DNA from: Macrostomum lignano
Lineage: Eukaryota
DNA length: 64,000 bases
Assembly: GCA_002269645.1 (NCBI GenBank)
Contig: NIVC01002288.1
Coordinates: forward strand, 1-64,000
Direction of reading: 5' to 3'
Part shown: positions 531 through 63,624 of the stretch, piece after piece
Layout of the letters: each line of letters begins with the position of its first letter
How positions within the stretch are numbered: position 1 is the stretch's first letter
Program-made: the position numbers and the translations under genes
The notes under the pieces: model-generated
Told to the model about the DNA's origin: nothing
Databases searched by the model: none
What the model saw: the letters and a program-made list of their open reading frames with translations, nothing else

Positions 531-997
531 AGTCCAGTAATTGTCAAAGTGCAAATTATTCTTATGAATTCATGCAGAGCTTTCGTACCTTGTCTAAGTC
601 GTACGCTCGTAACCAACAAACATCGACGCGTGTTTAAACTGCAATTCACTAGTTTATTACTTTTCAAAGCAAATCTAGTTTTTCACTCTAGCGGCTAACA
701 AAAAACTCAAAAACTTTTTCTTCCCATTTCCATTCAATGAAAAAGTTAAAGTAGAGCTAAAAAATAGGCATTAAAAGCTGTCACGCATCCGTCACGTCAG
801 TAATTTTTTAGCATCACTCATTGAACAAAAAGCTAAATTTTGCGTGTCAAATTTACTGCTTAAATTCTAAATTCTCTGCTCGCCCTGGGACTCCAAAAAA
901 ACTCAATGCCAGTAGAGCTACTATAAAAGTTTGCAAATGAGATCGCTAGCATGTGTGCCAGATACATTTCTTTGTGCGGGATCTCAAAACAGAGGCA

Positions 998-1785
998 ATG
1001 AGTTCGGGACTCAATGCTTTGGTCGCTGTTGCAGTGGCCGCTCTGCTGGTCTCCGGGTCGCTGTGCCAGCGCAAAGCCACTCCGGTCTATGTGGGCTGCT
1101 TCGTTGACCAAGCTGCTCCCAACAGAGACATGCAGGGCCTGTTTGCATCGCCCAGCTTGGACCGTTTAGCGTCACCTATATGGCGCAAGGCTTTTGTGCG
1201 AAGAAGCGACATGACGGTGGATCTGTGCAGAGAGATCTGCACCTACGGCGGCTTTCGATACGCTGCCAGTTCAGGGGCATCAATGACTGCGCCTGCGACT
1301 CCAGCTACGGCTCATTCGGACAAGCGCCTGAAGCTGATTGCGTGTACCAATGCTCCGGAAATGCCGCCCAGATTTGCGGCGGATCGTACCGAAACTCCAT
1401 CTACGAGAATGTGTACTCAACTAGTGAGTCAATTTGCACAGTCGCCTTTTTTTATTGCATAGTCGCGATTGTTTATTCTGCGAGCATATGAATAGGATTT
1501 TTCTAAACTTTGCTGAACCCTTTTCTATTCGCCGAAGCCTCCCAAGGGCGACTCTTCCGCAAGTTCGCCGCCTCTGCCGCCCCTCCGCTGGTCACCACTT
1601 CCGAATTCGCCGGCTCCCTGGGCTGGGACGTCAAGACGCAGAGTCTGATGCAGTGCGCCGCCTCCTGCGCCCGGTCTGCCAGCTGCTCCTCCTATCGCTT
1701 CAACAGCAGCAGCGGCCTCTGCCGCCTCAGCAGCTTCGCCACCGCCTTCGCCAACGAGACTGGCGATGTCTGGATCTCCGCCTAA
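998..1785 (+). pseudogene. Secreted WSC + PAN/Apple-like gene copy 1, frameshifted (pseudogene or assembly indels)
   Basis: ATG at 998 and a signal peptide, then a WSC domain (YVGCFVD...MTVDLCREIC...CACDSSY...CSGNAAQICGG). Exon 1 998-1423 (GTGAGT donor), exon 2 1538-1785 (C-x3-C-x5-C..YRF...C.L). Against the paralog at 14402 there is a -1 near 1146, a +1 near 1189 and a +2 near 1270-1280. Confidence 0.7.
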
Positions 1786-2064: not shown

Positions 2065-2372
2065 TAACAATAACAATTTATTGCACCTGCCCCTATGGAC
2101 GGATGTGCAACCGACAGCTCAGCCGCAGCTATTGCGCGGCGCCTCTGAAGGCTGCGTACGGCTGTTCAGTCCAAGGACTGGGGGGTCGCCACACACACCC
2201 TCATTTACCCCAGCTAATGCTGGCACCCATTTTATAGCTGGGTGAACTGAAGCGATGCAGAGTTAAATGTCTTGCTCAAGGAGACAATTTGTTACTGTTG
2301 GATCCGGGAATCGAACCCCCCCCCGACCTTTAAGTCGCGAGTTCGACGCTCTAACCACCAGGCTACAACCCC
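2065..2372 (-). mobile_element. tRNA-derived SINE, copy 1
   Basis: The minus strand starts GGGGTTGTAGCCTGGTGGTTAGAGCG (A box), then GTTCGATTCC (B box), then a ccttgagcaagaca...cacccagct..aaaatgggtgcc core. Homologous to the copies at 13579 and 28482. Confidence 0.8.
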
Positions 2373-3220: not shown

Positions 3221-3659
3221 CTGCATGTTTGAGGCCACAGAAAGCACAGCAAATTCAATATAATAGTAGACAGTTAGTAGAAATAAATATAAAATAAATA
3301 TTTGCTGGAGGGCTGTGACCACCCTGGCGCAACGCCTTCGGCGACATGGTCCCACAACCAGAGCTGAGGCAATTCTACCCGTTCTGCCCGCTGACTCCTG
3401 AGTGCATGCAAGTGCGCCAGTACTTTACACAGGAAACTCATTCACACGCTCACACAAGGTGTACAGCGGACCTGACTTATTCTTGAGTAGAATGCATGAT
3501 AGCCATCTAAGGGCCAACCCGAAGCATTCACTAAATTCTCGTATCACGCCTCATGCAGAAGCAGAAGCTTTGACCATTTAGCTGAGACCCATAATCCAGA
3601 GACCTGTCCACGCTCTATACACACGCGGTGACATGCGTTATTTAAGAAAAATACGATGA

Positions 3660-6600
3660 CACTACTATATGAACCCGTAAGTGTTGATTTTGGAGGTGGG
3701 GTGGGTGTCAACCCTCCTCGCCTCTCATTGGCTGGCGCCCCGATCACTAGGTGATCGATACCCGTATCGATATCGGCGCTCGGCGCGCGCGCGCCGCAGG
3801 CGCGTGGCGCCAAGCGCCGCAGGCGCACCCTCCCGATATTAGATCCCAATAAATCAATCAGATCCCAAATCAATCAGATCCCAAATCAATCAGATCCCAA
3901 GCGCACCCTCCAGAGCAGCAGGCGTCCATGCCGCAGGCGCCCCTCCCCACCGCACGCGCCCTCCCCGACATGTATGCCGCAGGCGCCCTCCCCGCCTCAG
4001 GCGCCCCTCCCGATATGTATGCGCACTCTCCCTATATGTACACCGATATGTATGCAGCAGGCGCCCGAGTGTACACTCTCCGATATGTGTGTACACCGAT
4101 ATGTAGTCATCGATACGGGCCTCTTCCCCTCTCTCACCTACATCTCATCTAGCGAAATCGAACCCAGGTCGCGCCCATACTAGGACACTACACGGTTGTG
4201 GGGTATAGGGAGCGAGAAGTTTCAACCCTAACGCTGACGCAGCCCTGTACAGTGAGAGTGTACGGGCAGAGAGGGGTGGGGCGGACAGAGAACCAGCCAC
4301 TAGGTTGTTATACTGTTGAAGCATAGGGAGCGAGAAGTTTTAACCCCGATGCTGACGCAGCCCTGTACACTGAGCGTGTACGGGCAGAGGGTGGGTGGAA
4401 AGAGATGTGAATAACACAGCCTGCTGCAGGAGCCGGATAGAGAGGCGCATGCTAGGACAGAGAGGTAGTGTGAGTCACACACACCCCACAGAGAAAGCCA
4501 TACAGAGGATAGAGAGCTCCCTCCCCAGTTGCAGGGGACAGAGAGGCAGGCAGGGTATGCAGGGGCATGCGAACCGTCAAGGGGCCACGCGAGGATAGAG
4601 TGGAGGAGCAGAGATGTGTTTGGACAGAGAGCCAGCCACGTGTGAGTAGTGTGAGGGAACAGAAACATATGGAGCAGGAGGGAGATAGGAAGCAAACGCG
4701 CAGGGTAAGGGAGCCACACAGGGCGGTACAGTGAGACACGGGCAGGGGTGGAGCCGTGCGTGGACAGAGCTGAACGGCACGGTCAGCTGCAGGAATAGGA
4801 TGATAGAGAGGCGCGGAGGGGGACAGAGAGCAGTGTGCAGGGGTAGGCAGCCACGCAGGCTGGGGAACAGAGAGGCGCGTGTCAGCCAGTTGCAGCCCGG
4901 GACAGAGAAGTATGAAGGGGGGCCTGGGACAGAGTTCCGAGCAAGGCACAGAGGTAGGGTCCTGTAGCTATGTATAGGCAGGGAGCCACGCGAGGGCAGG
5001 ACAGGGGAGCAGACATGCAAGTTGCATGCAAGGCCAGAGAGGTGTGCGCGGAGGGAGACAGAGAGCAGTGTGTAGGGGTAGGTAACAGCAAACTTTAGTA
5101 GCGGCGCGTGCGGGGACGGAGAAACCAGTCAGAGCATACAGAGACGTTACAGAGAGGTACACAAGCAGAGACCAAAGCGAGCAGAGCACATGTGTAGGGA
5201 CAGAGACGTGAGGGAGAATCGACCAAAACACGCTATGTATTTTCAAAAGTTGGTTTTAGTGCAACATGTTTAATAGTGGGTAGTATAATAGTATGTACAT
5301 AGTAGGTATAATAGTAGTAATAATAGTAAGCATATTAGCCCAAAAGGTAGACTAAAACAGGCTAAACTGTGTGTACGCATCCTCATCACCCCACAAGCCC
5401 CCTCTCCCGCCAGACTCACTCTACCAAACCCTCCTGTATTGCTGCATGAAGGAAAATATAGTGTAAAAATACAGATCTTAACCGTCAGACCGCTGAAATC
5501 AGGGCACACTAGAGGGGGTTTCGGGGTCTGCATGCTCTATGTAAGCTGCTTGAGGAGGTTCCAAGGGCGTTGTGAGGGTTTCCATTATGTTTTGAAAAAA
5601 ACTAGAGGCTTAAATACAACGTTTTATTCAAAAGTAGGTTATTTTAATGAAATAGCTGACACAATCATTGTCGAGAGTAGAAATTTTTATAAGAAACCAG
5701 GCATTTTAGCAAAAATAAACCTTCAAACCACATAAAATTGAATAAAAAGCAGACATTTTCAATTATAAACCGCAAGTATTTTAATAGAAAAGTAAGCAAA
5801 CAAGGCACAAAACCAGCAAATTTTACCTTTTTATTTTAATGTTACTGATAAGGTAGAGAGTAGAAACTTGTGAGCTGTACGAGTTAGAAAGTATTAACCA
5901 TTATGTATCGTATGAATTATTAGTTCAGTACCAGCCATTGGTCAAGCGAGCATTTATGAAGTTATTACGAGTGATGAAGGGATAGAGAGCTATATACAGG
6001 AAGACAGTATCCTTCTAAACCACCACGAACAGATTGCTAATAGAGATAAGCTTTGTCTGTGTGCAGTATGAGTAAGCGAAGGCGGGGCAAATACTTTTCC
6101 ACATGCCGGACAGAATAGTATTGTGCTAGGATTTCTCTCGAAATCGCGGTACGTTACTAGTTTTTATCACACCATCCAGATGCGTCAACTAGTCAGCAGT
6201 AGTCATTTATATGTTATTAGAACTTACAAACCCAGGTCAAGTAAATATTACAAAGAGTATATTACGTACACACGCCAACTCCGAATACCAAGCCATACTA
6301 GTCTACTTGCAGTGCTCCTGGAGGGAAGGGACGGCGGGGTGTACATCCGGCAGGGTGGGCGTCCAGCGAGTGTACATCTGACAGGATGGGTGTTCAGCAA
6401 GTGTACATCTGACAGGGTGGGCGTTCAGCAAGTGTACCTTCAGCGTCGAGTAGGTGTACACCCGTCAGTGGGAACTCAGCCCCTCCCACCAATGTCGTGT
6501 GCATGCGGTTAGTCAGTATAGTGGTGGGGTAGACGGTGCAGGAAGGAAACCCAGATGCTGACGCTGCCCTGTACAGCGAGCAACCAGCCCTCCTGTAGCA

Positions 6601-9600
6601 GGAGGGGGACAGAGAGTGCGTGGAGGCAGTAGGAGATAGAGGACGCTACCCGGCATGTCGCAGCACGCGGCGCGGGACAGAGAGGCAGTGTGTAAGTCAC
6701 CCCCACAGGGAGAGCTGCCCTGGCAGGAGGCGCGGGACAGAGAGGCGGTGAATCACACCCCACGGAGAGAGCCGTACAGCGAGCTTCCCCACCCGAGTCC
6801 GGTAAATATTACAGAGTATTACGTGCACACGCCAGCCCTGAATACCAAGCCATACTAGTCTACCTGCAGTGCTCCCAGAGGGAAGGGATGGTCAGGAGTT
6901 ACACACCAAGAATGCATTCATACAAAGAGTACACAACTCGAGCCCAGACACCAAGTCACAGTCTACTTACAGTAGAGATGGTAGATTAATAGCAAGATTA
7001 TATTACAATTAGACCTCCCTAGCACATGAGGAGTGAAATTCAATAATAATTGAATTCAATAATAATACAACATTTAGACGTAGTAATTTAATTACAAAAT
7101 ACCACTAACACTGAGCCAACGAATTGTAGGTTACAAAGGAGTTGCCACTCATATGGAAAGCCAGTATAATGCAGGTGTATATTATTAAAACATAGACAAA
7201 AACGATGCAGACGTATATACACACTATTGATTTTGTACATGTACATTTCGGCATATTACCACACATCGCAGGCACATATTATATATCGGGGATAGGTTAA
7301 AATACACACATCGTAGATGTAGAAGCAGACACAATGCAGGAAAATTATGATACGAGTGTACATATTAGTGCGTAAAAGTATCATATTATGACACCCTGTA
7401 GCACATATTGACATAATGCAGGGGAAAATATTGACAGAAATAGTACACAATTGTAGAGGTAACAACCCGCCAACTAGTAAGGACATCCAGCACTTGTTCA
7501 GGTTTTTATTATTTCGAGACGAGTGTCATGCCCCCGCAAGAGATCTTATCAGAAATTTGTTGAACTCCACTGCAACTCTCCCAGAGCCTCCAAATGTGAG
7601 TTTTTAACCCAGGGTCGAGTACAAAGGACCCGCCCACTCTTAACCCCAAGGGGTGATCGTAGCGGAGACCAAGTACAGTGCGGACGGAGAGGGGTAACAG
7701 AAAGCGCTGCATCAGACCGTAGGGCTGCATTCCTCCCCGAGGTAGGCGCGTCAGCTCCCACTCCTCATTTAACCATCAAGTAAACTAAAGAAGTCAAGCA
7801 GAAAGCCTTACAATCACCCGCAACCAGCACAAGTAAGAGTACTTTCCACTAGAGAGCCATAGTGCAAGATTCGCGAGCCAAGTTGAAGAAGCACACCAAA
7901 TTACACTAAAGACATATGTATTAAAAAGCATACCGGCACCTCTACAAAAACACAGTATGTACCGATTAAAGTTGCTTTTGGTGCAGTGTATTTAATAAAA
8001 AGCAGGTACCTAACACAAAAGTAGGCATCAATGCAGTGCACGGACTAAACTGTATTTACAAACGCAGGGCAACGAACTACACACAATGTAGCGCATAGAC
8101 ATAATTGTACGCATAAATGTACGCAATTTCCGGTATATAGGACCAAATGTACACAATGTACACAAACACACACACACACACTCAGGCGCATCCTGCAGCG
8201 CATCCTGCAGCACCGATCGCCGCAGGCGATGGCGCCATCGGCAGGAAGCTCTTGCTGTGAATACGCCTGAGTGTGTGTGTGTGTGTTTGTGTACATTGTG
8301 TACATTTGGTCCTATATACCGGAAATTGCGTACATTTATGCGTACAATTATGTCTATGCGCTACATTGTGTGTAGTTCGTTGCCCTGCGTTTGTAAATAC
8401 AGTTTAGTCCGTGCACTGCATTGATGCCTACTTTTGTGTTAGGTACCTGCTTTTTATTAAATACACTGCACCAAAAGCAACTTTAATCGGTACATACTGT
8501 GTTTTTGTAGAGGTGCCGGTATGCTTTTTAATACATATGTCTTTAGTGTAATTTGGTGTGCTTCTTCAACTTGGCTCGCGAATCTTGCACTATGGCTCTC
8601 TAGTGGAAAGTACTCTTACTTGTGCTGGTTGCGGGTGATTGTAAGGCTTTCTGCTTGACTTCTTTAGTTTACTTGATGGTTAAATGAGGAGTGGGAGCTG
8701 ACGCGCCTACCTCGGGGAGGAATGCAGCCCTACGGTCTGATGCAGCGCTTTCTGTTACCCCTCTCCGTCCGCACTGTACTTGGTCTCCGCTACGATCACC
8801 CCTTGGGGTTAAGAGTGGGCGGGTCCTTTGTACTCGACCCTGGGTTAAAAACTCACATTTGGAGGCTCTGGGGAGAGTTGCAGTGGAGTTCAACAAATTT
8901 CTGATAAGATCTCTTGCGGGGGCATGACACTCGTCTCGAAATAATAAAAACCTGAACAAGTGCTGGATGTCCTTACTAGTTGGCGGGTTGTTACCTCTAC
9001 AATTGTGTACTATTTCTGTCAATATTTTCCCCTGCATTATGTCAATATGTGCTACAGGGTGTCATAATATGATACTTTTACGCACTAATATGTACACTCG
9101 TATCATAATTTTCCTGCATTGTGTCTGCTTCTACATCTACGATGTGTGTATTTTAACCTATCCCCGATATATAATATGTGCCTGCGATGTGTGGTAATAT
9201 GCCGAAATGTACATGTACAAAATCAATAGTGTGTATATACGTCTGCATCGTTTTTGTCTATGTTTTAATAATATACACCTGCATTATACTGGCTTTCCAT
9301 ATGAGTGGCAACTCCTTTGTAACCTACAATTCGTTGGCTCAGTGTTAGTGGTATTTTGTAATTAAATTACTACGTCTAAATGTTGTATTATTATTGAATT
9401 CAATTATTATTGAATTTCACTCCTCATGTGCTAGGGAGGTCTAATTGTAATATAATCTTGCTATTAATCTACCATCTCTACTGTAAGTAGACTGTGACTT
9501 GGTGTCTGGGCTCGAGTTGTGTACTCTTTGTATGAATGCATTCTTGGTGTGTAACTCCTGACCATCCCTTCCCTCTGGGAGCACTGCAGGTAGACTAGTA

Positions 9601-12600
9601 TGGCTTGGTATTCAGGGCTGGCGTGTGCACGTAATACTCTGTAATATTTACCGGACTCGGGTGGGGAAGCTCGCTGTACGGCTCTCTCCGTGGGGTGTGA
9701 TTCACCGCCTCTCTGTCCCGCGCCTCCTGCCAGGGCAGCTCTCCCTGTGGGGGTGACTTACACACTGCCTCTCTGTCCCGCGCCGCGTGCTGCGACATGC
9801 CGGGTAGCGTCCTCTATCTCCTACTGCCTCCACGCACTCTCTGTCCCCCTCCTGCTACAGGAGGGCTGGTTGCTCGCTGTACAGGGCAGCGTCAGCATCT
9901 GGGTTTCCTTCCTGCACCGTCTACCCCACCACTATACTGACTAACCGCATGCACACGACATTGGTGGGAGGGGCTGAGTTCCCACTGACGGGTGTACACC
10001 TACTCGACGCTGAAGGTACACTTGCTGAACGCCCACCCTGTCAGATGTACACTTGCTGAACACCCATCCTGTCAGATGTACACTCGCTGGACGCCCACCC
10101 TGCCGGATGTACACCCCGCCGTCCCTTCCCTCCAGGAGCACTGCAAGTAGACTAGTATGGCTTGGTATTCGGAGTTGGCGTGTGTACGTAATATACTCTT
10201 TGTAATATTTACTTGACCTGGGTTTGTAAGTTCTAATAACATATAAATGACTACTGCTGACTAGTTGACGCATCTGGATGGTGTGATAAAAACTAGTAAC
10301 GTACCGCGATTTCGAGAGAAATCCTAGCACAATACTATTCTGTCCGGCATGTGGAAAAGTATTTGCCCCGCCTTCGCTTACTCATACTGCACACAGACAA
10401 AGCTTATCTCTATTAGCAATCTGTTCGTGGTGGTTTAGAAGGATACTGTCTTCCTGTATATAGCTCTCTATCCCTTCATCACTCGTAATAACTTCATAAA
10501 TGCTCGCTTGACCAATGGCTGGTACTGAACTAATAATTCATACGATACATAATGGTTAATACTTTCTAACTCTGTACAGCTCACAAGTTTCTACTCTCTA
10601 CCTTATCAGTAACATTAAAATAAAAAGGTAAAATTTGCTGGTTTTGTGCCTTGTTTGCTTACTTTTCTATTAAAATACTTGCGGTTTATAATTGAAAATG
10701 TCTGCTTTTTATTCAATTTTATGTGGTTTGAAGGTTTATTTTTGCTAAAATGCCTGGTTTCTTATAAAAATTTCTACTCTCGACAATGATTGTGTCAGCT
10801 ATTTCATTAAAATAACCTACTTTTGAATAAAACGTTGTATTTAAGCCTCTAGTTTTTTTCAAAACATAATGGAAACCCTCACAACGCCCTTGGAACCTCC
10901 TCAAGCAGCTTACATAGAGCATGCAGACCCCGAAACCCCTCTAGTGTGCCCTGATTTCAGCGGTCTGACGGTTAAGATCTGTATTTTTACACTATATTTT
11001 CCTTCATGCAGCAATACAGGAGGGTTTGGTAGAGTGAGTCTGGCGGGAGAGGGGGCTTGTGGGGTGATGAGGATGCGTACACACAGTTTAGCCTGTTTTA
11101 GTCTACCTTTTGGGCTAATATGCTTACTATTATTACTACTATTATACCTACTATGTACATACTATTATACTACCCACTATTAAACATGTTGCACTAAAAC
11201 CAACTTTTGAAAATACATAGCGTGTTTTGGTCGATTCTCCCTCACGTCTCTGTCCCTACACATGTGCTCTGCTCGCTTTGGTCTCTGCTTGTGTACCTCT
11301 CTGTAACGTCTCTGTATGCTCTGACTGGTTTCTCCGTCCCCGCACGCGCCGCTACTAAAGTTTGCTGTTACCTACCCCTACACACTGCTCTCTGTCTCCC
11401 TCCGCGCACACCTCTCTGGCCTTGCATGCAACTTGCATGTCTGCTCCCCTGTCCTGCCCTCGCGTGGCTCCCTGCCTATACATAGCTACAGGACCCTACC
11501 TCTGTGCCTTGCTCGGAACTCTGTCCCAGGCCCCCTTCATACTTCTCTGTCCCGGGCTGCAACTGGCTGACACGCGCCTCTCTGTTCCCCAGCCTGCGTG
11601 GCTGCCTACCCTGCACACTGCTCTCTGTCCCCCTCCGCGCCTCTCTATCATCCTATTCCTGCAGCTGACCGTGCCGTTCAGCTCTGTCCACGCACGGCTC
11701 CACCCCTGCCCGTGTCTCACTGTACCGCCCTGTGTGGCTCCCTTACCCTGCGCGTTTGCTTCCTATCTCCCTCCTGCTCCATATGTTTCTGTTCCCTCAC
11801 ACTACTCACACGTGGCTGGCTCTCTGTCCAAACACATCTCTGCTCCTCCACTCTATCCTCGCGTGGCCCCTTGACGGTTCGCATGCCCCTGCATACCCTG
11901 CCTGCCTCTCTGGCCCCTGCAACTGGGGAGGGAGCTCTCTATCCTCTGTATGGCTTTCTCTGTGGGGTGTGTGTGACTCACACTACCTCTCTGTCCTAGC
12001 ATGCGCCTCTCTATCCGGCTCCTGCAGCAGGCTGTGTTATTCACATCTCTTTCCACCCACCCTCTGCCCGTACACGCTCAGTGTACAGGGCTGCGTCAGC
12101 ATCGGGGTTAAAACTTCTCGCTCCCTATGCTTCAACAGTATAACAACCTAGTGGCTGGTTCTCTGTCCGCCCCACCCCTCTCTGCCCGTACACTCTCACT
12201 GTACAGGGCTGCGTCAGCGTTAGGGTTGAAACTTCTCGCTCCCTATACCCCACAACCGTGTAGTGTCCTAGTATGGGCGCGACCTGGGTTCGATTTCGCT
12301 AGATGAGATGTAGGTGAGAGAGGGGAAGAGGCCCGTATCGATGACTACATATCGGTGTACACACATATCGGGAGAGTGTACACTCGGGGCGCCTGCTGCA
12401 TACATATCGGTGTACATATAGGGAGAGTGCGCATACATATCGGGAGGGGCGCCTGAGGCGGGGAGGGCGCCTGCGGCATACATGTCGGGGGAGGGCGCGT
12501 GCGGTGGGGAGGGGCGCCTGCGGCATGGACGCCTGCTGCTCTGGAGGGTGCGCTTGGGATCTGATTGATTTGGGATCTGATTGATTTGGGATCTGATTGA

Positions 12601-12794
12601 TTTATTGGGATCTAATATCGGGAGGGTGCGCCTGCGGCGCTTGGCGCCACGCGCCTGCGGCGCGCGCGCGCCGAGCGCCGATATCGATACGGGTATCGAT
12701 CACCTAGTGATCGGGGCGCCAGCCAATGAGAGGCGAGGAGGGTTGACACCCACCCCACCTCCAAAATCAACACTTACGGGTTCATATAGTAGTG
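3660..12794. mobile_element. 9.1-kb non-autonomous foldback (palindromic) DNA transposon, CMC/Chapaev-like termini
   Basis: 3660-8188 is the reverse complement of 8264-12794 with only a few indels and substitutions. Termini are CACTACTATATG...CATATAGTAGTG, flanked by ATGA at 3656-3659 and 12795-12798. No transposase ORF. Confidence 0.85.
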
Positions 12795-12952
12795 ATGACT
12801 ATTCAGCGTAGTCTTCTAGTGGTCCTTATGGCCATCATGCATTGACTAGCGGCAATTTAAGGCTCATTCGAAGCCGTCATCAAATGATAACAACGGCATA
12901 CGAGCTAACGGGTCTTTTAATCACAAGGTAAGCTCTGACGCACGGTCCCTAC

Positions 12953-15900
12953 CTGCAGTCCTGCGATGAATCCGTTGATTCCCCCGCTTGCTGCCTCGAC
13001 TGTCGAAGTCTCCCCATTGTCGCCCCCGCCGTCGCCGCCTCCTCCGCCAGCAGCGAACAGGCCGCGCAGTTCGTCTAGCCCGATGCGCAATGCCTTGACG
13101 TGCTCGAAGGTCCGTTCAACCAGCTGGTGCCGACGATTGTTGAAGCTGGTCTGGCCCTGCCGCACTCCGTCGGGCGCAGCCACGCAGCCGTAGGTGACGC
13201 GCAGGAGGCGTCCCGTCTGCAGGCGCGCCAGGCTGACCAGGAACTGTGGCGGCACAGCGATGCCGCTCAAGTCGACATCCTTGATGCCGTGACCGGAGGG
13301 AATGGCGTCCTTCAGGAACGGCTCCAACAGGGCGGGGGTGTCCTTCGACTCGATGGGGTTGTAGCCGAGCTAAAGACAAGCCGGTTGCGGTGACAAATTT
13401 ATTTAGAAAAGAATCAAATCCAATGATATAAACGGAGATTTTAGTTGAAAAACAAGGAAAGTTATTTAAGAAATAAGTGACAGGGCGTTAAGAGAGATAA
13501 GTGACAGGGCGTTTCTGAAGTTTAATGTTGGAAATACTGGTGCAGCATCGCTTCTTGTTCTGCCTGTTCTTGTTTGAAGGGGTTGTAGCCTAGTGGTCAG
13601 GGCGTCGGACTCACGACTAAAAGGTCGGGGGTTCGACTCTCGACCCACTCGGAACAAGTTGTGTCCTTGAGCAAGACGGGTATCAGTTTTAAAATGGGTG
13701 CCAGAATTAGCTGGGGTAATTGAGGGTGTGTGTGTGTGTGTGTGTGGCGACCCCCCAGTGCATGGACTGAATAGTCGTACGCAGCCTTCAGATGCGGCTG
13801 AGCTGTCGGTTGCACATCTGTCCATTAGGGCAAGTGTAATCATTTATATTATGTCAATTGATATTTATTCAAGAAGAACTTTGCAAGCCTACAAAACTAA
13901 CCTAACTGCGTTTTGACAATTACAGCTTCAATCACAACCCGAATTTGCTCAAAAATTTTCGAAATGTCAAAATAAGTTTCTGAGTAACTGACTGTCAACG
14001 ATCTTTTACCGGAAATTTTTATGTAAAAAAATCAATTTCAGGTTTTGGCAATCATAGCCAGAAAGCCTCTTAGTCTTTCCGCCATCTACCCACCAAAGCA
14101 GCTTTGTCCCATGCACTGGATCCTCCACTTCCTGCGCCTTTGAACAAAAGGGAAGGACCAAGTTTCTTTTAGCACTTTTGCCAGAAATCGCGCAGTCACC
14201 CCGTCTTCCAGATCAGCTCAGCGCACTGGAAGCAATCGATTGTTTCCATCTATTTTTCTTCCAAAATTTCAGGTTGCTTAAAGCAGGAAATTGGCAGCAG
14301 GATGCTGGCATCCGATCAAAACTCCAACAGGTTAGCAAAGTTTTAAAGCAGCAACAAGTGAGACGCATCTGCGAGACAGGAGTTAGCAAGTTCAGCAAGT
14401 CATGCGTGCCTGTCTCGCTGCATGGGCGGCTGCTGCCCTGGTCTCTCTGCTGGTATCCAAGTCGCTGAGCCAGCACAAAGTTACTCCAGTCTACGTCGGC
14501 TGCTTCAAAGACCAAGCTGCTCCCAACAGAGACATGCAGGGCCTTGTTGGCATCTCTCAGTTGGGACCATTCAGCGTCACCTACATGGCGCAGGCCACTG
14601 TGAGAAGAGACGACATGACGGTGGATCTGTGCAGCGAGATCTGCACCTACGGCGGCTTCCGGTACGCTGGTGTGCAAGCTTACACCGACTGTACATGCGA
14701 CTCCAGTTACGGCTTTTTGGGTCCCGCGCCAGAATCTGATTGCACGTACCCATGCAGAGGGAATGCCAGTCAGATTTGCGGCGGACCTTACCGAAACTCC
14801 ATCTACGAGAATGTGTACTCGTTTGGTAAATATGTCTGCAGTTTTCTTCGTACGTTAATTGTTCTCATATAAGTCGTATATGTGTAGGTCGTATAGTTAT
14901 TATGCAGCCAATTGATTCTTGATCATGTTTGTGCGCTTTGGTTTGCAGGCTCTCAAAAGCTCCGTCGCTTCCGAAAGATTGCTGCATCAGCCGCCCCTTC
15001 GCTGGTCACATCGGGCGGCTCTCAGGGCTGGAGCATCACGACGCGGAGTCTCGTCATGTGCGCCGGCTTCTGCGCTCGGACTGCCAGCTGCGTTGCCTAT
15101 CGCTTCAACGAAAGCAGTGGTCTCTGCCAGCTCAGCAGCTTCGCCGCCCTCTTTATGAACGAAACAGGCGAAGCCTGGATTGCCGTCTGATGCCCTGGAG
15201 TTGGCAGCGGCAGGCTCTGGGGCAGAAATTGCCATCATTCTGAATCATCTGCCTCGATCCATGCTGCTGATGAACACTAAACTTTAACGTTTCCACGAAA
15301 GCCGCCACTGACTTAGCTCTATAATGAATGCTCCCACAATCTGTTTCTAGCAGTAGGAATACAAAGCCATTTTTCGCCCCTTTTTGTATCAACGGGGATT
15401 TATTTGTCCAACTGGCTTTTCACTTTGTGTCGGAACGGAGCAACACGAAATTAAAGAACAAGATAAATAAGGAATTACTGAGCAATGCAAAAATTTTACA
15501 ACTAGGACTCACATCTAGCGTGGTGAGACTGGAGTTCTGCTGCAGAGTCTGCACAATGGCCAGCGCGGACCGGCCGGACATCCGGTTGTGCCTGAGGCGC
15601 AGCTTCTCCAGCACGAAGTTCTTGCGCAGAGCCATCACCAAGCCCTGGCAGGAGCGGTCGCTGAAGCCGTTCCAGGACAGATCGAGGTCCTTCAGCCCGT
15701 TGTTGGCCTGCACGACGAAGCATAACCGCACTTTGTAGAAAACTTTATGAATTATTGAGAGTGAAACGAGTCGGAAAGCACCTGCAGTCTGAGCATGCAA
15801 GGAGGCTGCTGGCAGAGCATAGTCAAAGGGAAATTTATGATTAGTGCGAGGACAGGGTACCTGAGCAGGGAACGCGTCCGACTCTCGCTTGTGCATGAAA

Positions 15901-18900
15901 ATTTACCTGAGGCTTGTCGTGCGATGCATGAGGGGCCAGTCCCCAAGGCACAGAGTGCACGTGCCTGACGATTAGAAAGTCAGGGCCCCTGTACACCCCG
16001 TTGCGTAGTCCCCCGTACTCACCCCAATGTCACGTGACTCTCAGCCAACCAACTATTTATGTCTACATTGAGTAGCCCGATACCCGAACTCACCCCAATG
16101 TCACGTGACTCTCAGCCAACCAACTATTTATGTCTACACTGAGTAGCCCGATCCGGTACTCACCCCAATGTCACGTGACTCTTAGCCAACCAACTATTTA
16201 TGTCTACATTGAGTAGCCCGATACCCGTAATCACCCCAGTGTCACGTGACTCTCAGCTAATCAACTATTTATGTCTACACTGAGTAGCCCGATCCCGTAC
16301 TCACCCCAATGTCACGTGACTCTCAGCCAACCAACTATTTATGTCTACATTGAGTAGCCCGATCCCGTACTCACCCCAATGTCACGTGACTCTCAGCCAA
16401 CCAACTATTTATGTCTCCATTGAGTAGCCCGATCCCGTACTCACCCCAATGTCACGTGACTCTCAGCCAACCAACTATTTATGTCTACATTGAGTAGCCC
16501 GATCCCCGTAATCACCCCAATGTCACGTGACTCTCAGCCAACCAACTATTTATGTCTACATTGAGTAGCCCGATCCCGTACTCACCCCAATGTCACGTGA
16601 CTCTCAGCCAACCAACTATTTATGTCTACATTGAGTAGCCCGATCCCGTACTCACCCCAATGTCACGTGACTCTCAGCCAACCAACTATTTATGTCTCCA
16701 TTGAGTAGCCCGATCCCCGTACTCACCCCAATGTCACGTGACTCTCAGCCAACCAACTATTTATGTCTACATTGAGTAGCCCGATCCCGTACTCACCCCA
16801 ATGTCACGTGACTCTCAGCCAACCAACTATTTATGTCTACATTGAGTAGCCCGATCCCGTACTCACCCCAATGTCACGTGACTCTCAGCCAACCAACTAT
16901 TTATGTCTCCATTGAGTAGCCCGATCCCGTACTTACCCCAATGTCACGTGACTCTCAGCCAACCAACTATTTATGTCTCCATTGAGTAGCCCGATCCCCG
17001 TACTCACCCCAATGTCACGTGACTCTCAGCCAACCAACTATTTATGTCTACATTGAGTAGCCCGATCCCGTACTCACCCCAATGTCACGTAACTCTCAGC
17101 CAACCAACTATTTATGTCTACATTGAGTAGCCCGATCCCGTACTCACCCCAATGTCACGTGACTCTCAGCCAACCAACTATTTATGTCTCCATTGAGTAG
17201 CCCGATCCCCGTACTCACCCCAATGTCACGTGACTCTCAGCCAACCAACTATTTATGTCTACATTGAGTAGCCCGATCCCGTACTCACCCCAATGTCACG
17301 TGACTCTCAGCCAACCAACTATTTATGTCTACATTGAGTAGCCCGATCCCGTACTCACCCCAATGTCACGTGACTCTCAGCCAACCAACTATTTATGTCT
17401 ACACTGAGTAGCCCGATCCCCCGTACTCACGTAGAGTCCTTTCGTCAGGCTGTTGGCTCCCTCTTCTCGGATGCGGTTCCAGCTGAGATCCAGCACTTCC
17501 AGTGTGTCATTGTAGCCTAAAAATTCAATGCATTAAATTTTTTATTCATGTTTTTTCGCTCTCTCAGGTGTAAAAGTGCAAAAAGATTTTAGAGCATTTC
17601 TTACCCAGAGCAGACTCCATGCCGCCATCGTTGCATTCGATAGCATTCTTTGATAGAATTAACTGCTTGAGGTGAATGTTGTTCTGCAATGCAAATCAAC
17701 GGAGACTTCGCAAGTTAAGCTCAAGCTAATCTTAAATTTTTAGAACAACTGAGTTACCTCTAACAGTTTACAGACGAACGCAGCTTCCTTATCAGTGATG
17801 GAGTTGTGAGACAGATCGAGCTTGGCTAGGCTGTTGTTGTTTAGCAGAGCTGAGCACAGACCCGCCAAGCCGCGCTCGCCAAGGCCGTTTGAGGACAAGT
17901 CCTTGGGGGCAGAGAGAATGAAGAGAATCTTTAAAGATTTTTGTCTGCTTTCATGTGTTTTGTAAGGAGCCTGGCATTCGAGCCTTGACAGATACAATGG
18001 TGTCTGGAAAGACAGTAGTGTGTCTTTAGGGGCAGGATAGTGTGTCTGGAGGGGCAGTATAGTGTGTCTTTAGGGGCAGGATAGTGTGTCTGGAGGGGCA
18101 GTATAGTGTGTCTTTAGGGGCAGTAGTGTGTCTGGAGGGGCAGTATAGTGTGTCTGGAGGGGCAGTAGTGTCTCTGGAGGGGCAGTAGTGTCTCTGGAGG
18201 GGCAGTAGTGTCTCTGGAGGGGCAGTAGTTTGTCTGGAGGGGCAGTACTGTGTCTGGAAGGGCAGTACTGTGTCTGGGAGGGCAGTACTGTGTCTGGGAG
18301 GGCAGTACTGTGTCTGGGAGGGCAGTATGTTTCTGGGAGGGCAGTATGTGTCTGGGAGGGCAGTATGTGTCTGGGAGGGCAGTACTGTGTCTGGAGGTGC
18401 AGTACTGTGTCTGGAAGGACAGTACTGTGTCTGGAAGGGCAGTACTGTGTCTGGGAGGGCAGTACTGTGTCTGGGAGGGCAGTACTGTGTCTGGGAGGGC
18501 AGTATGTGTCTGGGAGGACAGTACTGTGTCTGGGAGGGCAGTATGTGTCTGGGAGGGCAGTACTGGGAAGGACAGCACTGTGTCTTGAAAGGCCTTAGAG
18601 GTTTCAAAGAAATGGTGCAGTTTGTGATTTTTGAGAGGTGGTAGCATTTTCCGACGAGGCAATATAGAATCTGTAAACCAATTTTTGCCCTCAATCTGAA
18701 AACAGACATCAAGCCAAACTTTGAGCACTGCTCACTAGCTCGCGCAGCCGCCTAGCTGTGTTGACCATGTCGCACAGGGCAAGCAGACCGTCATCCAGAA
18801 TGTTGTTCTCCGGAATGCTGATGCTGCTGATGCTCTCGCTGTTCTGCAATCGCGCAAGGATGATGTAGCTCTTGTGTTTGTGCCGATCGGTCATAACGAC

Positions 18901-21599: not shown

Positions 21600-23200
21600 T
21601 TGGAACGAGGGGAGAAGGGAGGGAGAGGTGAGATAACAGAAGAGAATTGGGAGTTGGAGAAGAGAGAGTAGGAGGGACTTGAGGGAGAGAGTAAAAGACT
21701 TGAGGGAGAGAGTAGACGCCTTGAGGGAGAGAGTAGACGCCTTGAGGGAGAGAGTAGACGCCTTGAGGGAGAGAGTAGAGGACTTGAGGGAGAGAGTAGA
21801 GGACTTGAGGGAGAGAGTAGACGCCTTGAGGGAGAGAGTAGACGCCTTGAGGGAGAGAGTAGAGGGACTTGAGGGAGAGAGTAGAGGGATATGAGGGAGA
21901 GAGTAGAGGGACTTGAGAGAGAGAGTAGAGGGACATGAGAGAGGGTAGAGGGACTTGAGGGAGAGAGTAGAGGGATATGAGGGAGAGAGTAGAGGGACTT
22001 GAGGGAGAGAGTAGACGCCTTGAGGGAGAGAGTAGACGAGTTGAGGGAGAGAGTAGACGCCTTGAGGGAGAGAGTAGAGGGATTTGCAAGAGAGAGTAGA
22101 GGGACTTGAGGGAGAGAGTGGAGGGACTTAAGGGAGAGAGTAGAGGGATATGAGGGAGAGAGTAGAAGGACTTGAGAGAGAGAGTAGAGGGACTTGAGGG
22201 AGAGAGTAGACGCCTTGAGGGAGAGAGTAGACGCCTTGAGGGAGAGAGTAGAGGGATTTGCAAGAGAGAGTAGAGGGACTTGAGGGAGAGAGTAGAGGGA
22301 CATGAGAGAGGGTAGAGGGACTTGAGGGAGAGAGTAGAGGGACATGAGAGAGAGAGAGTAGAGGGATATGAGAGAGAGAGTAGAGGGATATGAGGGAGAG
22401 AGTAGAGGGACATAAGAGAGAGAGTAGAGGGACTTGAGTGAGAGAGTAGAGGGACATGAGAGAGGGTAGAGGGACTTGAGGGAGAGAGTAGAGGGACATA
22501 AGAGAGAGAGTAGAGGGACTTGAGTGAGAGAGTAAAGGGACATGAGAGAGGGTAGAGGGACTTGAGGGAGAGAGTAGAGGGACATGAGAGAGAGAGAGTA
22601 GAGGGATATGAGAGAGAGAGTAGAGGGATATGAGGGAGAGAGTAGAGGGACATGAGAGAGAGAGTAGAAGGACATGAGAGAGAGTAGAGGGACATGAGGG
22701 AGAGAGTAGAGGGACATGAGAGAGAGAGAGTAGAGGGATATGAGGGAGAGAGTAGAGGGATATGAGGGAGAGAGTAGAGGGACTTGAGGGAGAGAGTAGA
22801 GGGACTTGAGGGAGAGAGTAGAGGGACTTGCGGGAGAGAGTAGAGGGATATGCGGGAGAGAGTAGAGGGATTTGCGGGAGAGAGTAGAGGGATTTGCGAG
22901 AGAGAGTAGAGGGATTTGCGGGAGAGAGTAGAGGGATTTGCGGGAGAGAGTAGAGGGATTTGCGGGAGAGAGTAGAGGGATTTGCGGGAGAGAGTAGAGG
23001 GATTTGCGGGAGAGAGTAGAGGGATTTGCGGGAGAGAGTAGAGGGATTTGCGGGAGAGAGTAGAGGGATTTGCGGGAGAGAGTAGAGGGATTTGCGGGAG
23101 AGAGTAGAGGGATTTGCGGGAGAGAGTAGAGGGATTTGCGGGAGAGAGTAGAGGGATTTGCGGAAGAGAGTAGAGGGACTTGAAGGAGAGAGTAGGGGAC
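21600..23200. repeat. 21-bp purine-rich minisatellite
   Basis: Unit gagggagagagtagagggact(t) with block-wise variants. Confidence 0.95.
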
Positions 23201-23859
23201 TTAAAAGCAGAGATGAGAGAACTTAAAGGGAACAGAAAACAGGGCGAACTTGAGAAACAGGGCTGAAGAGCAAGGAGAGAAGACACAGGCAAAGACAGAA
23301 CTGCTACTGCAGTAGCGGAAAGTGACGGGACACTTGAAGAAGAAATGGCAAATCAGAAGCCGCTGTCATTGGACAGTGCAGTCTGGCATGAGTGGGGTTG
23401 GACTCTGGCCCTCTGCTGCATGCCCAACTGCAGTTTTTATCTGGCACAGGAGCCGTCTGAGAGCCCGCTAATCTCCGTTGACAGTCCAACAGGAAACAAG
23501 ATTTCTAGAAAAAAGGTAGGCCAAGAGATTAACAGTTAACTCCGGCAGAGGCTACAAATGAAGGTTTAATTGAAATTTCAGACCTCAGCTCCGAGATGGC
23601 GGAATGGCTGCTCTCTCGATCGCCCAGCTGCGAGGATGTCGGCCGGGTCACTGAGCGGTGCGCGGTTTCATTTATTTCTGCCGAATTTCATCTCTGAAAT
23701 TGCTTTTTTATTGCTGGCGTCTGCGGCCGGCTTTTGGGACAGACGACTGGCTTGGATGACTTCCTGCTGAGGAATTGAGGGGCCGGACTGCGCTGCCGCC
23801 ATAGCATTTCTGAATTCAGAACTGGGTCGGTTTCAATGCGAGAGAATCATTGAATGGTG

Positions 23860-49244: not shown

Positions 49245-51205
49245 ACACTGACTACTGACACACTATCGAAAGGTAATTGGCAATAAGCTCTGGACAATAC
49301 TGACACATTATGGACATCTCACTACTGACACATTTTATACATCTCACTACTGACACATTTTATACATGTCACTACTGACACATTTTATACATGTCACTAC
49401 TGACACATTTTATACATCTCACTACTGACACATTTTATACATGTCACTACTGACACATTTTATACATGTCACTACTGACACATTTTATACATGTCACTAC
49501 TGACACATTTTATACATCTCACTACTGACACATTTTATACATGTCACTACTGACACATTTTATACATCTCACTACTGACACATTTTATACATCTCACTAC
49601 TGACACATTTTATACATCTCACTACTGACACATTTTATACATGTCACTACTGACACATTTTATACATGTCACTACTGACACATTTTATACATGTCACTAC
49701 TGACACATTTTATACATCTCACTACTGACACATTTTATACATCTCACTACTGACACATTTTATACATCTCACTACTGACACATTTTATACATCTCACTAC
49801 TGACACATTTTATACATGTCACTACTGACACATTTTATACATCTCACTACTGACACATTTTATACATGTCACTACTGACACATTTTATACATCTCACTAC
49901 TGACACATTTTATACATCTCACTACTGACACATTTTATACATCTCACTACGGACACATTTTATACATCTCACTACTGACACATTTTATACATCTCACTAC
50001 GGACACATTTTATACATCTCACTACTGACACATTTTATACATCTCACTACGGACACATTTTATACATGTCACTACTGACACATTTTACATCTAGCCGCTG
50101 ACCCATTTTAAACATTTAACAACTGACACATTTTACACATCTTACTACTGACACATTTGACACACCCAACTACTGAAGTTGCACTTTTATACATCTGACT
50201 GCTGACAAATTATAAACATCCAAATGCTGACACATTTTAAGCATCCAGCTGCTGACAAATTTTATACATCCAAATGCTGACACATTTTAAGCATCCAGCT
50301 GCTGACACATTTTATACATCCAAATGCTGACACATTTTAAGCATCCAACTGCTGACACATTTTATACATCCAAATGCTGACACATTTTATACATCCAACT
50401 GCTGACACATTTTATACATCCAACTGCTGACACATTTTATACATCCAACTGCTGACACATTTTATACATCCAACTGCTGACACATTTTATACATCCAAAT
50501 GCTGACACATTTGAAGCATCCAACTGCTGACACATTTTATACATCCAACTGCTGACACATTTGAAGCATCCAACTGCTGACACATTTTAAGCATCCAACT
50601 GCTGACACATTTTAAGCATCCAAATGCTGACACATTTGAAGCATCCAACTGCTGACACATTTTATACATCCAAATGCTGACACATTTGAAGCATCCAACT
50701 GCTGACACATTTTATACATCCAAATGCTGACACATTTGAAGCATCCAACTGCTGACACATTTTATACATCCAACTGCTGACACATTTGAAGCATCCAACT
50801 GCTGACACATTTTAAGCATCCAACTGCTGACACATTTTAAGCATCCAACTGCTGACACATTTTAAGCATCCAACTGCTGACACATTTTAAGCATCCAACT
50901 GCTCACACATTTTAAGCATCCAACTGCTGACACATTTTATACATCTCACTACTGACACACTTTAGACATCTCACTACTGACACATTTTAGATATCTCACT
51001 ACTCACTACTGACACACTTTATACATCTCACTACTGACACATTTCAGACATCTCACTACTGACACATTTAACATCTAGCCGCTGACCCATTTTAAACAGT
51101 CAACTACTGCCACATTTTAAACATTTACCAGCTGACACATTTTACACATCTTACTGCTGACACATTTTATGCATCCAACTGCTGACACATTTTATACATC
51201 TTATT
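49245..51205. repeat. 25-bp minisatellite with two unit variants, intergenic
   Basis: Variants actactgacacattttatacat(c/g)tc and ccaactgctgacacatttt(at/aag)cat. Confidence 0.96.

Positions 51206-52192: not shown

Positions 52193-63624
<11,432 letters not shown>

What the first reader, a model, noticed from the sequence alone, without database searches (positions are those of the whole stretch)
3660..12794. 9.1-kb foldback transposon whose whole body is a palindrome, with CACTA ends and a 4-bp TSD
Seen: two ~4.53-kb arms in exact inverted orientation around a 75-bp spacer, termini CACTACTAT.../...ATAGTAGTG, an ATGA duplication on both sides, unrelated flanks and no transposase. Known: CAC/GTG termini with 4-bp TSDs typify Chapaev within the CMC (CACTA-Mirage-Chapaev) superfamily, whose TIRs are normally far shorter than this. 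Inference: a mobile unit whose TIRs have grown to fill the whole element, or an inverted dimer of a 4.5-kb unit moved as one piece by a trans-acting CMC transposase. The TSD, the transposon-type ends and a non-adapter spacer argue against a chimeric-read artefact.
Basis: partly seen in the sequence, partly recalled or inferred. Interest (0 to 1): 0.9.

Follow-up and report, generated by a model that had tools for sequence, protein, structure and literature searches.

The report
Transposon-derived 9.1-kb palindrome in a flatworm
A 9.1-kb non-coding insertion in the flatworm Macrostomum lignano is a near-perfect inverted dimer of one transposon half, with CAC...GTG ends and a 4-bp target duplication; the structure looks real but is a known kind, and neither its family nor its mobility as a unit could be tested here.

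Summary
Arms 3660-8188 and 8264-12794 (4,529 and 4,531 nt) are inverted copies around a 75-nt spacer. The ends read CACTACTATATG.../...CATATAGTAGTG, with a direct ATGA on each side. The arms differ by one substitution and eight 1-nt indels, seven of them in G/C runs. Six-frame Pfam scans find no protein domain. A 9-mer, CCGCAGGCG, occurs four times in each subterminal region and once in the spacer, so the spacer is element sequence, not an adapter.

The window is the first 64 kb of contig NIVC01002288.1 of Macrostomum lignano Mlig_3_7, a PacBio-CLR/Canu assembly. The palindrome lies 3.7 kb from the contig end.

Best reading: a young, non-autonomous, transposon-derived palindrome with the architecture of maize Mu killer and the Ac "killer" insertions. 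One half of a cut-and-paste element was copied back on itself.

The ends and duplication fit CMC/Chapaev (CAC/GTG, 3-4 bp). With one copy and no transposase, that assignment could not be tested. No other copy, empty site or raw read was reachable. Transposition as one piece, formation in place and assembly error all remain open.

Novelty: new member of a known kind. Interest is modest.

The parts
3656..3659 (.). Left copy of the putative target-site duplication, ATGA
   Evidence: Read directly from the sequence. It is identical to 12795-12798 in direct orientation.
3660..8188 (+). Left arm, 4,529 nt. It starts with the terminus 5'-CACTACTATATGAACCCGTAAGTG. It is non-coding and purine-rich on the + strand (57%).
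   Evidence: Searches give the boundaries. Searches show no long ORF and no Pfam domain. One search shows the strand skew.
3660..4130 (+). Subterminal repeat region of the left arm. It holds CCGCAGGCG x4, CCGATATGTA x3, a 16-bp unit AAATCAATCAGATCCC x3.1, 45-bp and 33-bp tandem units, and small palindromes (ATCGATACCCGTATCGAT, CGATATCG). These are candidate transposase-binding sites.
   Evidence: CCGCAGGCG has 10 matches in the window against 0.19 expected by chance; 9 of the 10 lie in the element.
8189..8263 (+). Unique 75-nt spacer, CATCCTGCAGCGCATCCTGCAGCACCGATCGCCGCAGGCGATGGCGCCATCGGCAGGAAGCTCTTGCTGTGAATA. It holds one copy of the subterminal 9-mer CCGCAGGCG (8220), a 12-bp unit x2.2 and a 14-bp perfect palindrome, CGATGGCGCCATCG (8227-8240).
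   Evidence: No similarity to the SMRTbell adapter. The centre folds well as a hairpin.
8264..12794 (-). Right arm, 4,531 nt, the reverse complement of the left arm. It ends ...CATATAGTAGTG.
   Evidence: It differs from the left arm by 9 changes, of which 7 are G/C-run length changes.
12324..12794 (-). Subterminal repeat region of the right arm, the mirror of 3660-4130
12795..12798 (.). Right copy of the putative target-site duplication, ATGA

Best explanation
This is a genuine, young, transposon-derived palindrome in the Macrostomum lignano genome. It has the architecture of maize Mu killer and the Ac 'killer' composite insertions: both ends are the same transposon terminus, and the body is an inverted duplication of one element half.

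The progenitor was probably a large non-autonomous cut-and-paste element with CAC...GTG ends and subterminal repeat arrays. That fits the CMC (CACTA/Mirage/Chapaev) type.

There are two plausible routes to the dimer. In one, a nascent strand snapped back and copied its own half during abortive gap repair. In the other, the same end on two sister chromatids was used in an aberrant transposition and the broken inner ends then fused. In both routes the 75 nt of one-sided element sequence is left as the spacer.

A DDE transposase supplied in trans made the staggered cut that was filled in to give the ATGA duplication. Two identical ends, each with a terminus and binding-site arrays, are all such an enzyme needs, so the unit is in principle still mobilisable.

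Shown here: the structure, the ends, the duplication, the motif arrays, the absence of coding capacity and the very low arm divergence.

Inferred: mobility, the superfamily, the route by which the dimer formed, and whether it formed before or after arriving at this site.
For: - The palindrome ends exactly at CAC/GTG, and a direct 4-nt repeat lies immediately outside.
- The terminal 24-mer is unique to the two ends.
- Dense subterminal short repeats lie in the first ~450 bp. CCGCAGGCG has 10 window hits against 0.19 expected, 9 of them in the element, including one in the spacer. The spacer is therefore element sequence, as expected if one arm simply runs 75 nt further.
- The flanks are not mirror images, and the centre has no adapter similarity.
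- There is no ORF longer than 170 aa and no Pfam domain in six frames.
- The arms differ by 1 substitution and 8 one-base indels, 7 of them in G/C runs. This is typical of residual PacBio-CLR error in sequence that short reads cannot polish (assembly method). Paralogous contigs of the same genome are only 93-97% identical, so the dimer is much younger than the subgenome split.
- There are precedents. In Mu killer both TIRs derive from the same MuDR end, with inverted partial copies. The Ac composite insertions carry 1.8-3.9 kb inverted repeats of the Ac 5' end and perfect target duplications, and were made by sister-chromatid transposition.
- The Chapaev hallmarks are a 3-4 bp duplication and CAC/GTG termini.
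Against: - Only one copy was seen. There is no second copy, no progenitor with a different other half and no transposase in the 64-kb window or in 36 kb of paralogous loci.
- No empty site could be retrieved.
- A 4-nt flank match has a roughly 0.4% chance probability, not zero.
- The element lies 3.66 kb from the start of a contig in an assembly with many documented errors and chimeric scaffolds. No reads could be inspected.
- The arms carry no recognisable transposase fragment. The progenitor must therefore itself have been non-autonomous, so the parallel with Mu killer, which holds part of mudrA, is structural only.
Confidence: 0.45

Rival explanations
1. It is a member of a stable, multi-copy foldback-type family. 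In such a family, kilobase-long TIRs plus a short middle domain are the normal architecture, and the element transposes as a whole.
For: Long arms with a short middle domain, subterminal tandem repeats, no coding capacity and a target duplication are the defining look of foldback elements. That architecture has arisen independently in several superfamilies. The same window holds another long-TIR non-coding element at 38463-40040, so the genome tolerates such structures.
Against: About 4 kb of each arm is complex, non-tandem sequence, unlike the internally repetitive arms of classic foldback elements. The arms are virtually identical, which points to a very recent duplication rather than an inherited architecture. 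Most foldback elements are linked to the Mutator superfamily, and the one measured in the cited paper (Tetris) has 8-10 bp duplications, not 4. No second copy was seen in about 100 kb of M. lignano sequence.
Confidence: 0.2
2. It is an assembly artefact. A palindrome was created or exaggerated by chimeric or mis-corrected PacBio CLR reads near a contig end, for example an ordinary element whose second half was replaced by a fold-back copy during consensus building.
For: The window starts at base 1 of contig NIVC01002288.1, so the palindrome is only 3.66 kb from a contig end, where read support is thinnest. Mlig_3_7 is a Canu 1.4 CLR assembly with 64% error-free bases by REAPR. 36% of its scaffold length was later called chimeric. 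The arm differences look like read error.
Against: A missed-adapter or fold-back read gives mirrored flanks and an adapter or nothing at the centre. Here the flanks differ, the duplication is direct (ATGA on both sides, not ATGA/TCAT), and the centre has 75 nt of element-like sequence with no adapter similarity. An artefact would not be expected to end exactly at a CAC/GTG terminus with a matching 4-nt repeat.
Confidence: 0.12
3. It is an ordinary inverted segmental duplication of non-mobile DNA, made by a replication template switch or fold-back repair. On this reading the CAC ends and the ATGA match are coincidental.
For: Inverted duplications with short spacers arise by fold-back mechanisms without transposons. 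The inner arm boundary sits in a (CA)n tract next to short inverted homology (CTCAGGCG / CGCCTGAG), a plausible switch point. The region lies between tandem paralogous WSC-PAN exons, so it is duplication-prone.
Against: It needs three coincidences at once: outer boundaries at CAC/GTG (CACTA...), a 4-nt direct repeat exactly at those boundaries, and transposon-like subterminal motif arrays just inside them. A simple fold-back would also duplicate the flank in inverted orientation, which is not seen.
Confidence: 0.1

Closest known systems
Mu killer (Muk) of maize, an inverted duplication derivative of MuDR
   Same: Both ends are the same transposon terminus. The body is two partial copies of one element half in inverted orientation that meet at a central junction. 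It has no functional transposase, and it is a single, recently arisen locus (PMC3440606).
   Different: Muk is from the Mutator superfamily and contains about 1.3 kb of the mudrA transposase gene, which is what makes it a silencer. Here the arms are 4.5 kb, have no recognisable coding sequence and have CAC/GTG ends with a 4-bp duplication. No transcript or small-RNA evidence is available.
Ac 'killer' composite insertions (p1-ww-id1 and p1-ww-id4) made by sister-chromatid transposition plus re-replication
   Same: These insertions are bordered by transposon ends and perfect target-site duplications, and they contain kilobase-scale (1.8-3.9 kb) inverted repeats of the element's 5' end. They supply a documented mechanism by which a transposase-made insertion ends up as an inverted repeat of one element half (bioRxiv 10.1101/2020.01.07.897926).
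   Different: They are hAT elements with 8-bp duplications. They are tied to Mb-scale flanking inverted duplications and also contain non-element sequence. Here the unit is a clean dimer with a 75-nt spacer, and no flanking rearrangement is visible in the window.
Foldback-type elements (Drosophila FB, Galileo, Tetris and others)
   Same: They have long TIRs that make up most of the element, a short middle domain, repeats inside the TIRs that may carry extra transposase-binding sites, and usually no coding capacity. The architecture is known to evolve independently in different superfamilies (PMC4079207).
   Different: Classic foldback arms are largely tandem repeats, and the copies form families. 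Reported TIRs reach about 1.2-1.7 kb in Galileo and Tetris, with 7-10 bp duplications. Here the arms are 4.5 kb of mostly complex sequence, virtually identical, with a 4-bp duplication, and only one copy is known.
Chapaev / CMC (CACTA-Mirage-Chapaev) DNA transposons
   Same: They have invariable 5'-CAC...GTG-3' termini and a 3-4 bp target duplication (PMC4079192). The terminus CACTA and the subterminal short-repeat arrays recall CACTA/En-Spm ends (my own knowledge).
   Different: There is no CMC transposase in the element or the window. The TIR length is orders of magnitude above typical CMC TIRs. No autonomous relative with matching ends could be looked for.

Membership tests
CMC superfamily (Chapaev group) | Termini 5'-CAC ... 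GTG-3' | tested here: met
   CACTACTATATG... / ...CATATAGTAGTG at 3660 and 12794. Hallmark as stated in PMC4079192.
CMC superfamily (Chapaev group) | Target-site duplication of 3-4 bp (2 bp Mirage, 3 bp CACTA, 3-4 bp Chapaev) | tested here: inconclusive
   ATGA lies on both sides, which is compatible. From one copy the true length could be 3 nt (plus a chance match, p=0.25), 4 nt, or 5 nt (GATGA, counting the terminal G).
CMC superfamily (Chapaev group) | DDE transposase with CMC signature residues, or, for a non-autonomous element, ends matching those of an autonomous CMC element | not testable with these tools
   The arms have no Pfam domain in six frames, and the window has no transposase ORF. 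No Repbase/Dfam library and no searchable M. lignano genome were available. Only three annotated loci could be fetched.
CMC superfamily (Chapaev group) | Short TIRs (tens of bp) | tested here: not met
   The inverted repeat runs for 4,529 nt. This is a departure in architecture, not in end chemistry.
Foldback-type elements (structural class) | Long TIRs that make up most of the element, around a short middle domain, without coding capacity | tested here: met
   Two 4.5-kb arms, a 75-nt middle, and no ORF or Pfam domain.
Foldback-type elements (structural class) | TIRs built largely of internal tandem repeats | tested here: inconclusive
   Tandem units are confined to about the first 450 bp, plus a few short internal arrays (31-bp x3.2 at 6339-6437; 118-bp spaced repeat at 4205-4398). 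Most of each arm is complex sequence.
Foldback-type elements (structural class) | Multi-copy family with its own target duplications | not testable with these tools
   There is no other copy in the window or in L001/L003. The terminal 22-mer is absent from the metagenome and viral collections, but neither collection holds this genome.
Mu killer / Ac killer type (transposon-derived inverted duplication) | Both ends are the same element terminus, with inverted partial copies meeting at a central junction | tested here: met
   The two ends and arms are reverse complements of each other to within 9 differences. The asymmetric 75-nt centre carries an element motif.
Mu killer / Ac killer type (transposon-derived inverted duplication) | Derivation from a conventional progenitor element that has a different second half | not testable with these tools
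   This needs a genome-wide search for single-arm relatives, and the genome was not searchable here.
Mu killer / Ac killer type (transposon-derived inverted duplication) | Transcribed into hairpin RNA that yields small RNAs and silences the family | not testable with these tools
   No RNA or small-RNA data were available. The only relevant fact is that the left paralogous WSC-PAN copy (950-1783, +) reads towards the palindrome.
Long-read fold-back / missed-adapter chimera (artefact) | Adapter, or nothing, at the centre, and mirrored flanks beyond the arms | tested here: not met
   No SMRTbell similarity at the centre. The spacer carries an element motif. The flanks are different and the 4-nt repeat is direct.
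Long-read fold-back / missed-adapter chimera (artefact) | No spanning reads, or abnormal depth over the arms | not testable with these tools
   The raw reads (SRX1063031) cannot be accessed here.

The most novel reading that the evidence does not exclude
The palindrome is an animal counterpart of maize Mu killer. On this reading it is a spontaneously formed inverted duplication of a DNA-transposon end which, when read through from a neighbouring gene, gives a 4.5-kb hairpin RNA. That RNA would feed the flatworm's small-RNA/piRNA machinery and silence the element's own family. Equally unexcluded is that it is the first described foldback-form family with CMC-type ends that transposes as a 9-kb palindrome.
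Probability: 0.12. Interest if true: 0.6.

Novelty: new member of a known kind. Interest (0 to 1): 0.33.

Why it matters
If confirmed by reads and by an empty site, this would be a clean natural example, in a regenerating flatworm model, of a DNA transposon turned into a near-perfect 9-kb palindrome.

Such structures matter in three ways.
- They are fragile sites that can break chromosomes.
- They record aberrant transposition or repair.
- In maize they are the only known spontaneous triggers of heritable transposon silencing.

M. lignano has an active PIWI/piRNA system, three recently diverged subgenomes that give built-in empty-site controls, and transgenesis, so the silencer idea would be testable. 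As it stands the locus is one more transposon-derived inverted repeat of unproven family. It also warns that this part of Mlig_3_7 needs read-level validation.

Tried and rejected
**Protein content.** Six-frame Pfam scans of one arm plus the spacer gave nothing at E<=1.

**Other copies through the protein database.** A search with concatenated arm ORFs gave no hit. This negative is uninformative. The query's low-complexity words may have filled the candidate list, and the collection evidently holds no ORF-level calls for this species: the window's own kinase exon also had no close hit.

**Exact look-ups of arm ORFs.** The two longest ATG-initiated arm ORFs are not on record.

**Terminal 22-mer.** Absent from JGI metagenome contigs and IMG/VR. 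Neither collection contains this genome.

**Empty site in a paralogous contig.**
- The source was identified through the EIF1AD gene as M. lignano Mlig_3_7.
- The paralogous loci were fetched from NIVC01002859.1 and NIVC01002165.1. The 10-kb flank limit leaves both more than 10 kb short of the palindrome site.
- I reconstructed the spliced WSC-PAN gene next to the palindrome to use as a handle, but the look-up tool refuses spliced products.

**Similar contig coordinates.** I considered whether the near-equal coordinates of EIF1AD on the two contigs imply that both carry the 9-kb insert. I rejected this because the alignment offsets drift by about 1 kb in either direction over 20 kb.

**Rfam.** There are no gathering-level hits. 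A sub-threshold mir-3149 match at the centre (50 bits against a 100-bit cut-off) is only the (CA)n/(TG)n hairpin.

**Related short elements.** A scan for other CAC...GTG inverted pairs with short duplications found only pairs internal to the palindrome and the TA-flanked element at 38465-40038. A second CACTACTAT at 35950 has no partner and is at chance level.

**Other superfamilies considered and rejected.**
- hAT, Mutator and P: the 7-10 bp flanks do not match.
- Tc1/mariner and piggyBac: there is no TA or TTAA.
- Transib: the 5-bp reading would make the TIR imperfect, and the heptamer does not fit.
- LTR element: the ends are not TG...CA and the repeats are inverted, not direct.

Full report
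**1. Is it there?**

Yes. The repeat finder and a global alignment show one inverted repeat spanning 3660-12794. Walking in from both sides gives these boundaries:
- left arm 3660-8188 (4,529 nt)
- spacer 8189-8263 (75 nt)
- right arm 8264-12794 (4,531 nt)

The outer ends read CACTACTATATGAACCCGTAAGTG and its reverse complement. This 24-mer occurs nowhere else in the window, even with 3 mismatches allowed.

ATGA lies immediately outside both ends in direct orientation, at 3656-3659 and 12795-12798. The next bases outward do not continue the palindrome, so the boundaries are sharp.

The arms are not quite exact. They differ by one substitution (4538/11913) and eight single-base indels. Seven of the indels are length changes in runs of two to six G or C.

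**2. Where the window comes from, and why that matters**

An EIF1AD gene at 34.4-35.0 kb matched a protein that the window itself encodes, and a 90%-identical protein named as Macrostomum lignano. Looking up the former returned contig NIVC01002288.1 of assembly GCA_002269645.1 (Mlig_3_7). Its bases 24446-44898 are 100% identical to window 24446-44898. The window is therefore the first 64 kb of that contig, and the palindrome lies only 3.66 kb from a contig end.

Mlig_3_7 was built with Canu 1.4 from PacBio CLR reads and polished with Pilon. By REAPR only 64% of its bases are error-free (PMC5730564). A later study called 36% of scaffold length chimeric between subgenomes (PMC10733133).

Two consequences follow.
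- The G/C-run indels between the arms are what residual CLR error looks like in a duplicated sequence that short reads cannot polish. The true arms may differ by as little as one base in 4.5 kb.
- Read-level validation is needed before much weight is put on the structure.

**3. Against a simple artefact**

A missed-adapter or fold-back read would produce mirrored flanks and an adapter, or nothing, at the centre. Here:
- The flanks are different sequences.
- The 4-nt repeat is direct, ATGA on both sides rather than ATGA/TCAT.
- The centre has no similarity to the SMRTbell adapter.
- The centre carries CCGCAGGCG, a 9-mer that occurs four times in each subterminal region. It has 10 window matches against 0.19 expected by chance, and 9 of the 10 lie in the element.

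The spacer is therefore element sequence. I put an artefact at about 0.12.

**4. What the unit contains**

The first ~450 bp of each arm is a typical transposon subterminal region. It holds CCGCAGGCG x4, CCGATATGTA x3, a 16-bp unit x3.1, 45-bp and 33-bp tandem units, and several small palindromes.

The remaining ~4 kb is complex, purine-skewed, non-coding DNA with a few internal duplications. No ORF exceeds 170 aa. Six-frame translations give no Pfam match at E<=1. There are no tRNAs and no Rfam family hits. A sub-threshold mir-3149 match at the centre is only the (CA)n/(TG)n stem.

**5. Surroundings**

The insertion lies between two direct, 72%-identical paralogous blocks at 1025-1783 and 14429-15188. 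These encode a signal peptide, a WSC domain and a PAN domain. The right copy can be spliced into an intact 221-aa protein, and the left copy is frameshifted.

Diverged inverted copies of a dispersed ~300-bp repeat lie 1.3 kb to the left and 0.8 kb to the right. They sit at unequal distances and a third copy lies at 28.5 kb, so they are independent insertions.

The rest of the window holds LRR exons, EIF1AD, a CCDC186-like gene, a receptor tyrosine kinase and many minisatellites.

**6. What it most likely is**

Three features coincide at the boundaries: a CAC/GTG (CACTA...) terminus, a short direct duplication exactly outside it, and motif arrays just inside it. A non-mobile inverted duplication would need all three by coincidence, and would be expected to mirror the flank as well. 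I therefore take the unit to be transposon-derived.

The arm identity (about 99.8% as assembled, probably higher) contrasts with 93-97% between this contig and its paralogous subgenome contig. The inverted duplication is therefore much younger than the subgenome split, unless gene conversion keeps the arms uniform. That favours a recent duplication event over an inherited long-TIR architecture.

The asymmetric 75-nt centre that carries an element motif is what two routes would leave:
- One copy of the half-element runs 75 nt further than the other before the two are joined.
- A nascent strand snaps back on short inverted homology. The arms end at CTCAGGCG / CGCCTGAG beside a (CA)n tract, and the spacer has a 14-bp perfect palindrome.

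**7. Precedents**

Maize Mu killer is an internally deleted, partly duplicated MuDR. Both of its TIRs come from the same end, and two partial copies meet in an inverted duplication (PMC3440606).

Two Ac-silencing alleles contain composite insertions with 1.8-3.9 kb inverted repeats of the Ac 5' end and perfect 8-bp target duplications. They were produced by sister-chromatid transposition with re-replication and end fusion (bioRxiv 10.1101/2020.01.07.897926).

These show that a transposase-made, duplication-flanked insertion can consist of an inverted repeat of one element half. They also show that such a structure can arise at a site that already has the duplication. The ATGA repeat therefore shows that a transposase acted here. 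It does not show that the 9-kb palindrome travelled as one piece.

**8. Family assignment**

The published Chapaev hallmarks are a 3-4 bp duplication and invariable CAC/GTG termini (PMC4079192), and both are compatible with this element. Three things limit the assignment.
- The duplication length from one copy is uncertain. It could be 3 nt plus a chance match, 4 nt, or 5 nt if the terminal G is counted.
- There is no transposase in the element or the window.
- No repeat library or whole genome was searchable.

CMC is the best guess, not a tested membership.

The foldback label describes the architecture and is met. But foldback structure is known to arise in several superfamilies, and most foldback elements are linked to the Mutator superfamily; the example measured in the cited paper, Tetris, has 8-10 bp duplications (PMC4079207). 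DNA transposons make up 3.05% of this assembly.

**9. What could not be done**

I could not retrieve another copy or an empty site.
- The protein database holds no ORF-level calls for this species.
- Exact look-ups of arm ORFs failed.
- The paralogous loci that could be fetched stop more than 10 kb short of the site.
- The terminal 22-mer is absent from collections that do not contain this genome.

**10. Verdict**

Approximate weights:

| Reading | Weight |
|---|---|
| Young, one-off, transposon-derived inverted dimer of Mu-killer/Ac-killer architecture with CMC-like ends | 0.45 |
| Stable foldback family | 0.20 |
| Assembly artefact | 0.12 |
| Non-mobile inverted duplication | 0.10 |
| Anything else | remainder |

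It is a new member of a known kind and its interest is modest (0.33). The most interesting reading not excluded is a hairpin-RNA silencer of its own family in an animal. The left gene copy does read towards the palindrome, but there is no expression evidence.

Noticed in passing
window 38463-40040: A second non-coding long-inverted-repeat element of about 1.58 kb. Its arms are roughly 480-580 bp (95-99% complementary) around a ~620-bp middle. The ends read CACCATTTTACCC.../...GGGTAAAATGGTG and are flanked by TA on both sides, which is the Tc1/mariner-like signature. The same stretch aligns without a break in the paralogous contig NIVC01002859.1, so it predates the subgenome split.
   Followed up: partly
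window 36534-36658 and 37088-37212: An AT-rich inverted repeat of 125 nt (83% complementary) with a 429-nt spacer. It may be an old MITE-like element. Its ends and any duplication were not analysed.
   Followed up: no
window 2075-2372, 13579-13845 (inverted), 28482-28718: Three copies of a dispersed ~300-bp repeat, 72-88% identical. Translated ORFs in this stretch suggested a tRNA-like B-box segment, which would make it SINE-like, but this was not checked against a tRNA or SINE model. Two copies bracket the palindrome in inverted orientation at unequal distances, so they are not part of it.
   Followed up: partly
window 950-1783 and 14402-15190: Tandem paralogous genes or exon pairs that encode a signal peptide, a WSC domain and a PAN domain. 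The right copy splices (intron 14826-14948) into an intact 221-aa product. The left copy has a frameshift inside the WSC exon, so it is either a pseudogene or carries a CLR indel error. The palindrome lies between the two copies.
   Followed up: partly
window 52196-62000 (- strand): Exons of a receptor tyrosine kinase with fibronectin-III domains. The best database relatives are only 50-57% identical (rotifer, tapeworm, leech), and no identical entry was returned. The gene therefore appears to be unannotated in Mlig_3_7.
   Followed up: partly
window 34446-34898; loci L001, L003: EIF1AD is present on three contigs (NIVC01002288.1, NIVC01002859.1, NIVC01002165.1), presumably the three subgenome copies. 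The annotated products are 5'-partial. One locus does not translate to its assigned product, which suggests transcript-based annotation laid over frameshifted assembly sequence.
   Followed up: partly
window 16012-17430, 21662-23202, 29133-31376, 32802-33903, 41922-43568, 49298-51216, 58670-59735 and others: The density of long minisatellite and microsatellite arrays is very high, with periods from 4 to 70 bp and up to 2.2 kb per array. These arrays create most of the long ORFs in the window. Array lengths differ between the paralogous contigs.
   Followed up: no
window 8156-8296: A sub-threshold Rfam match to mir-3149 on both strands (50 bits against a gathering score of 100) at the palindrome centre. 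It is explained by the (CA)n/(TG)n stem and is not a microRNA call.
   Followed up: yes
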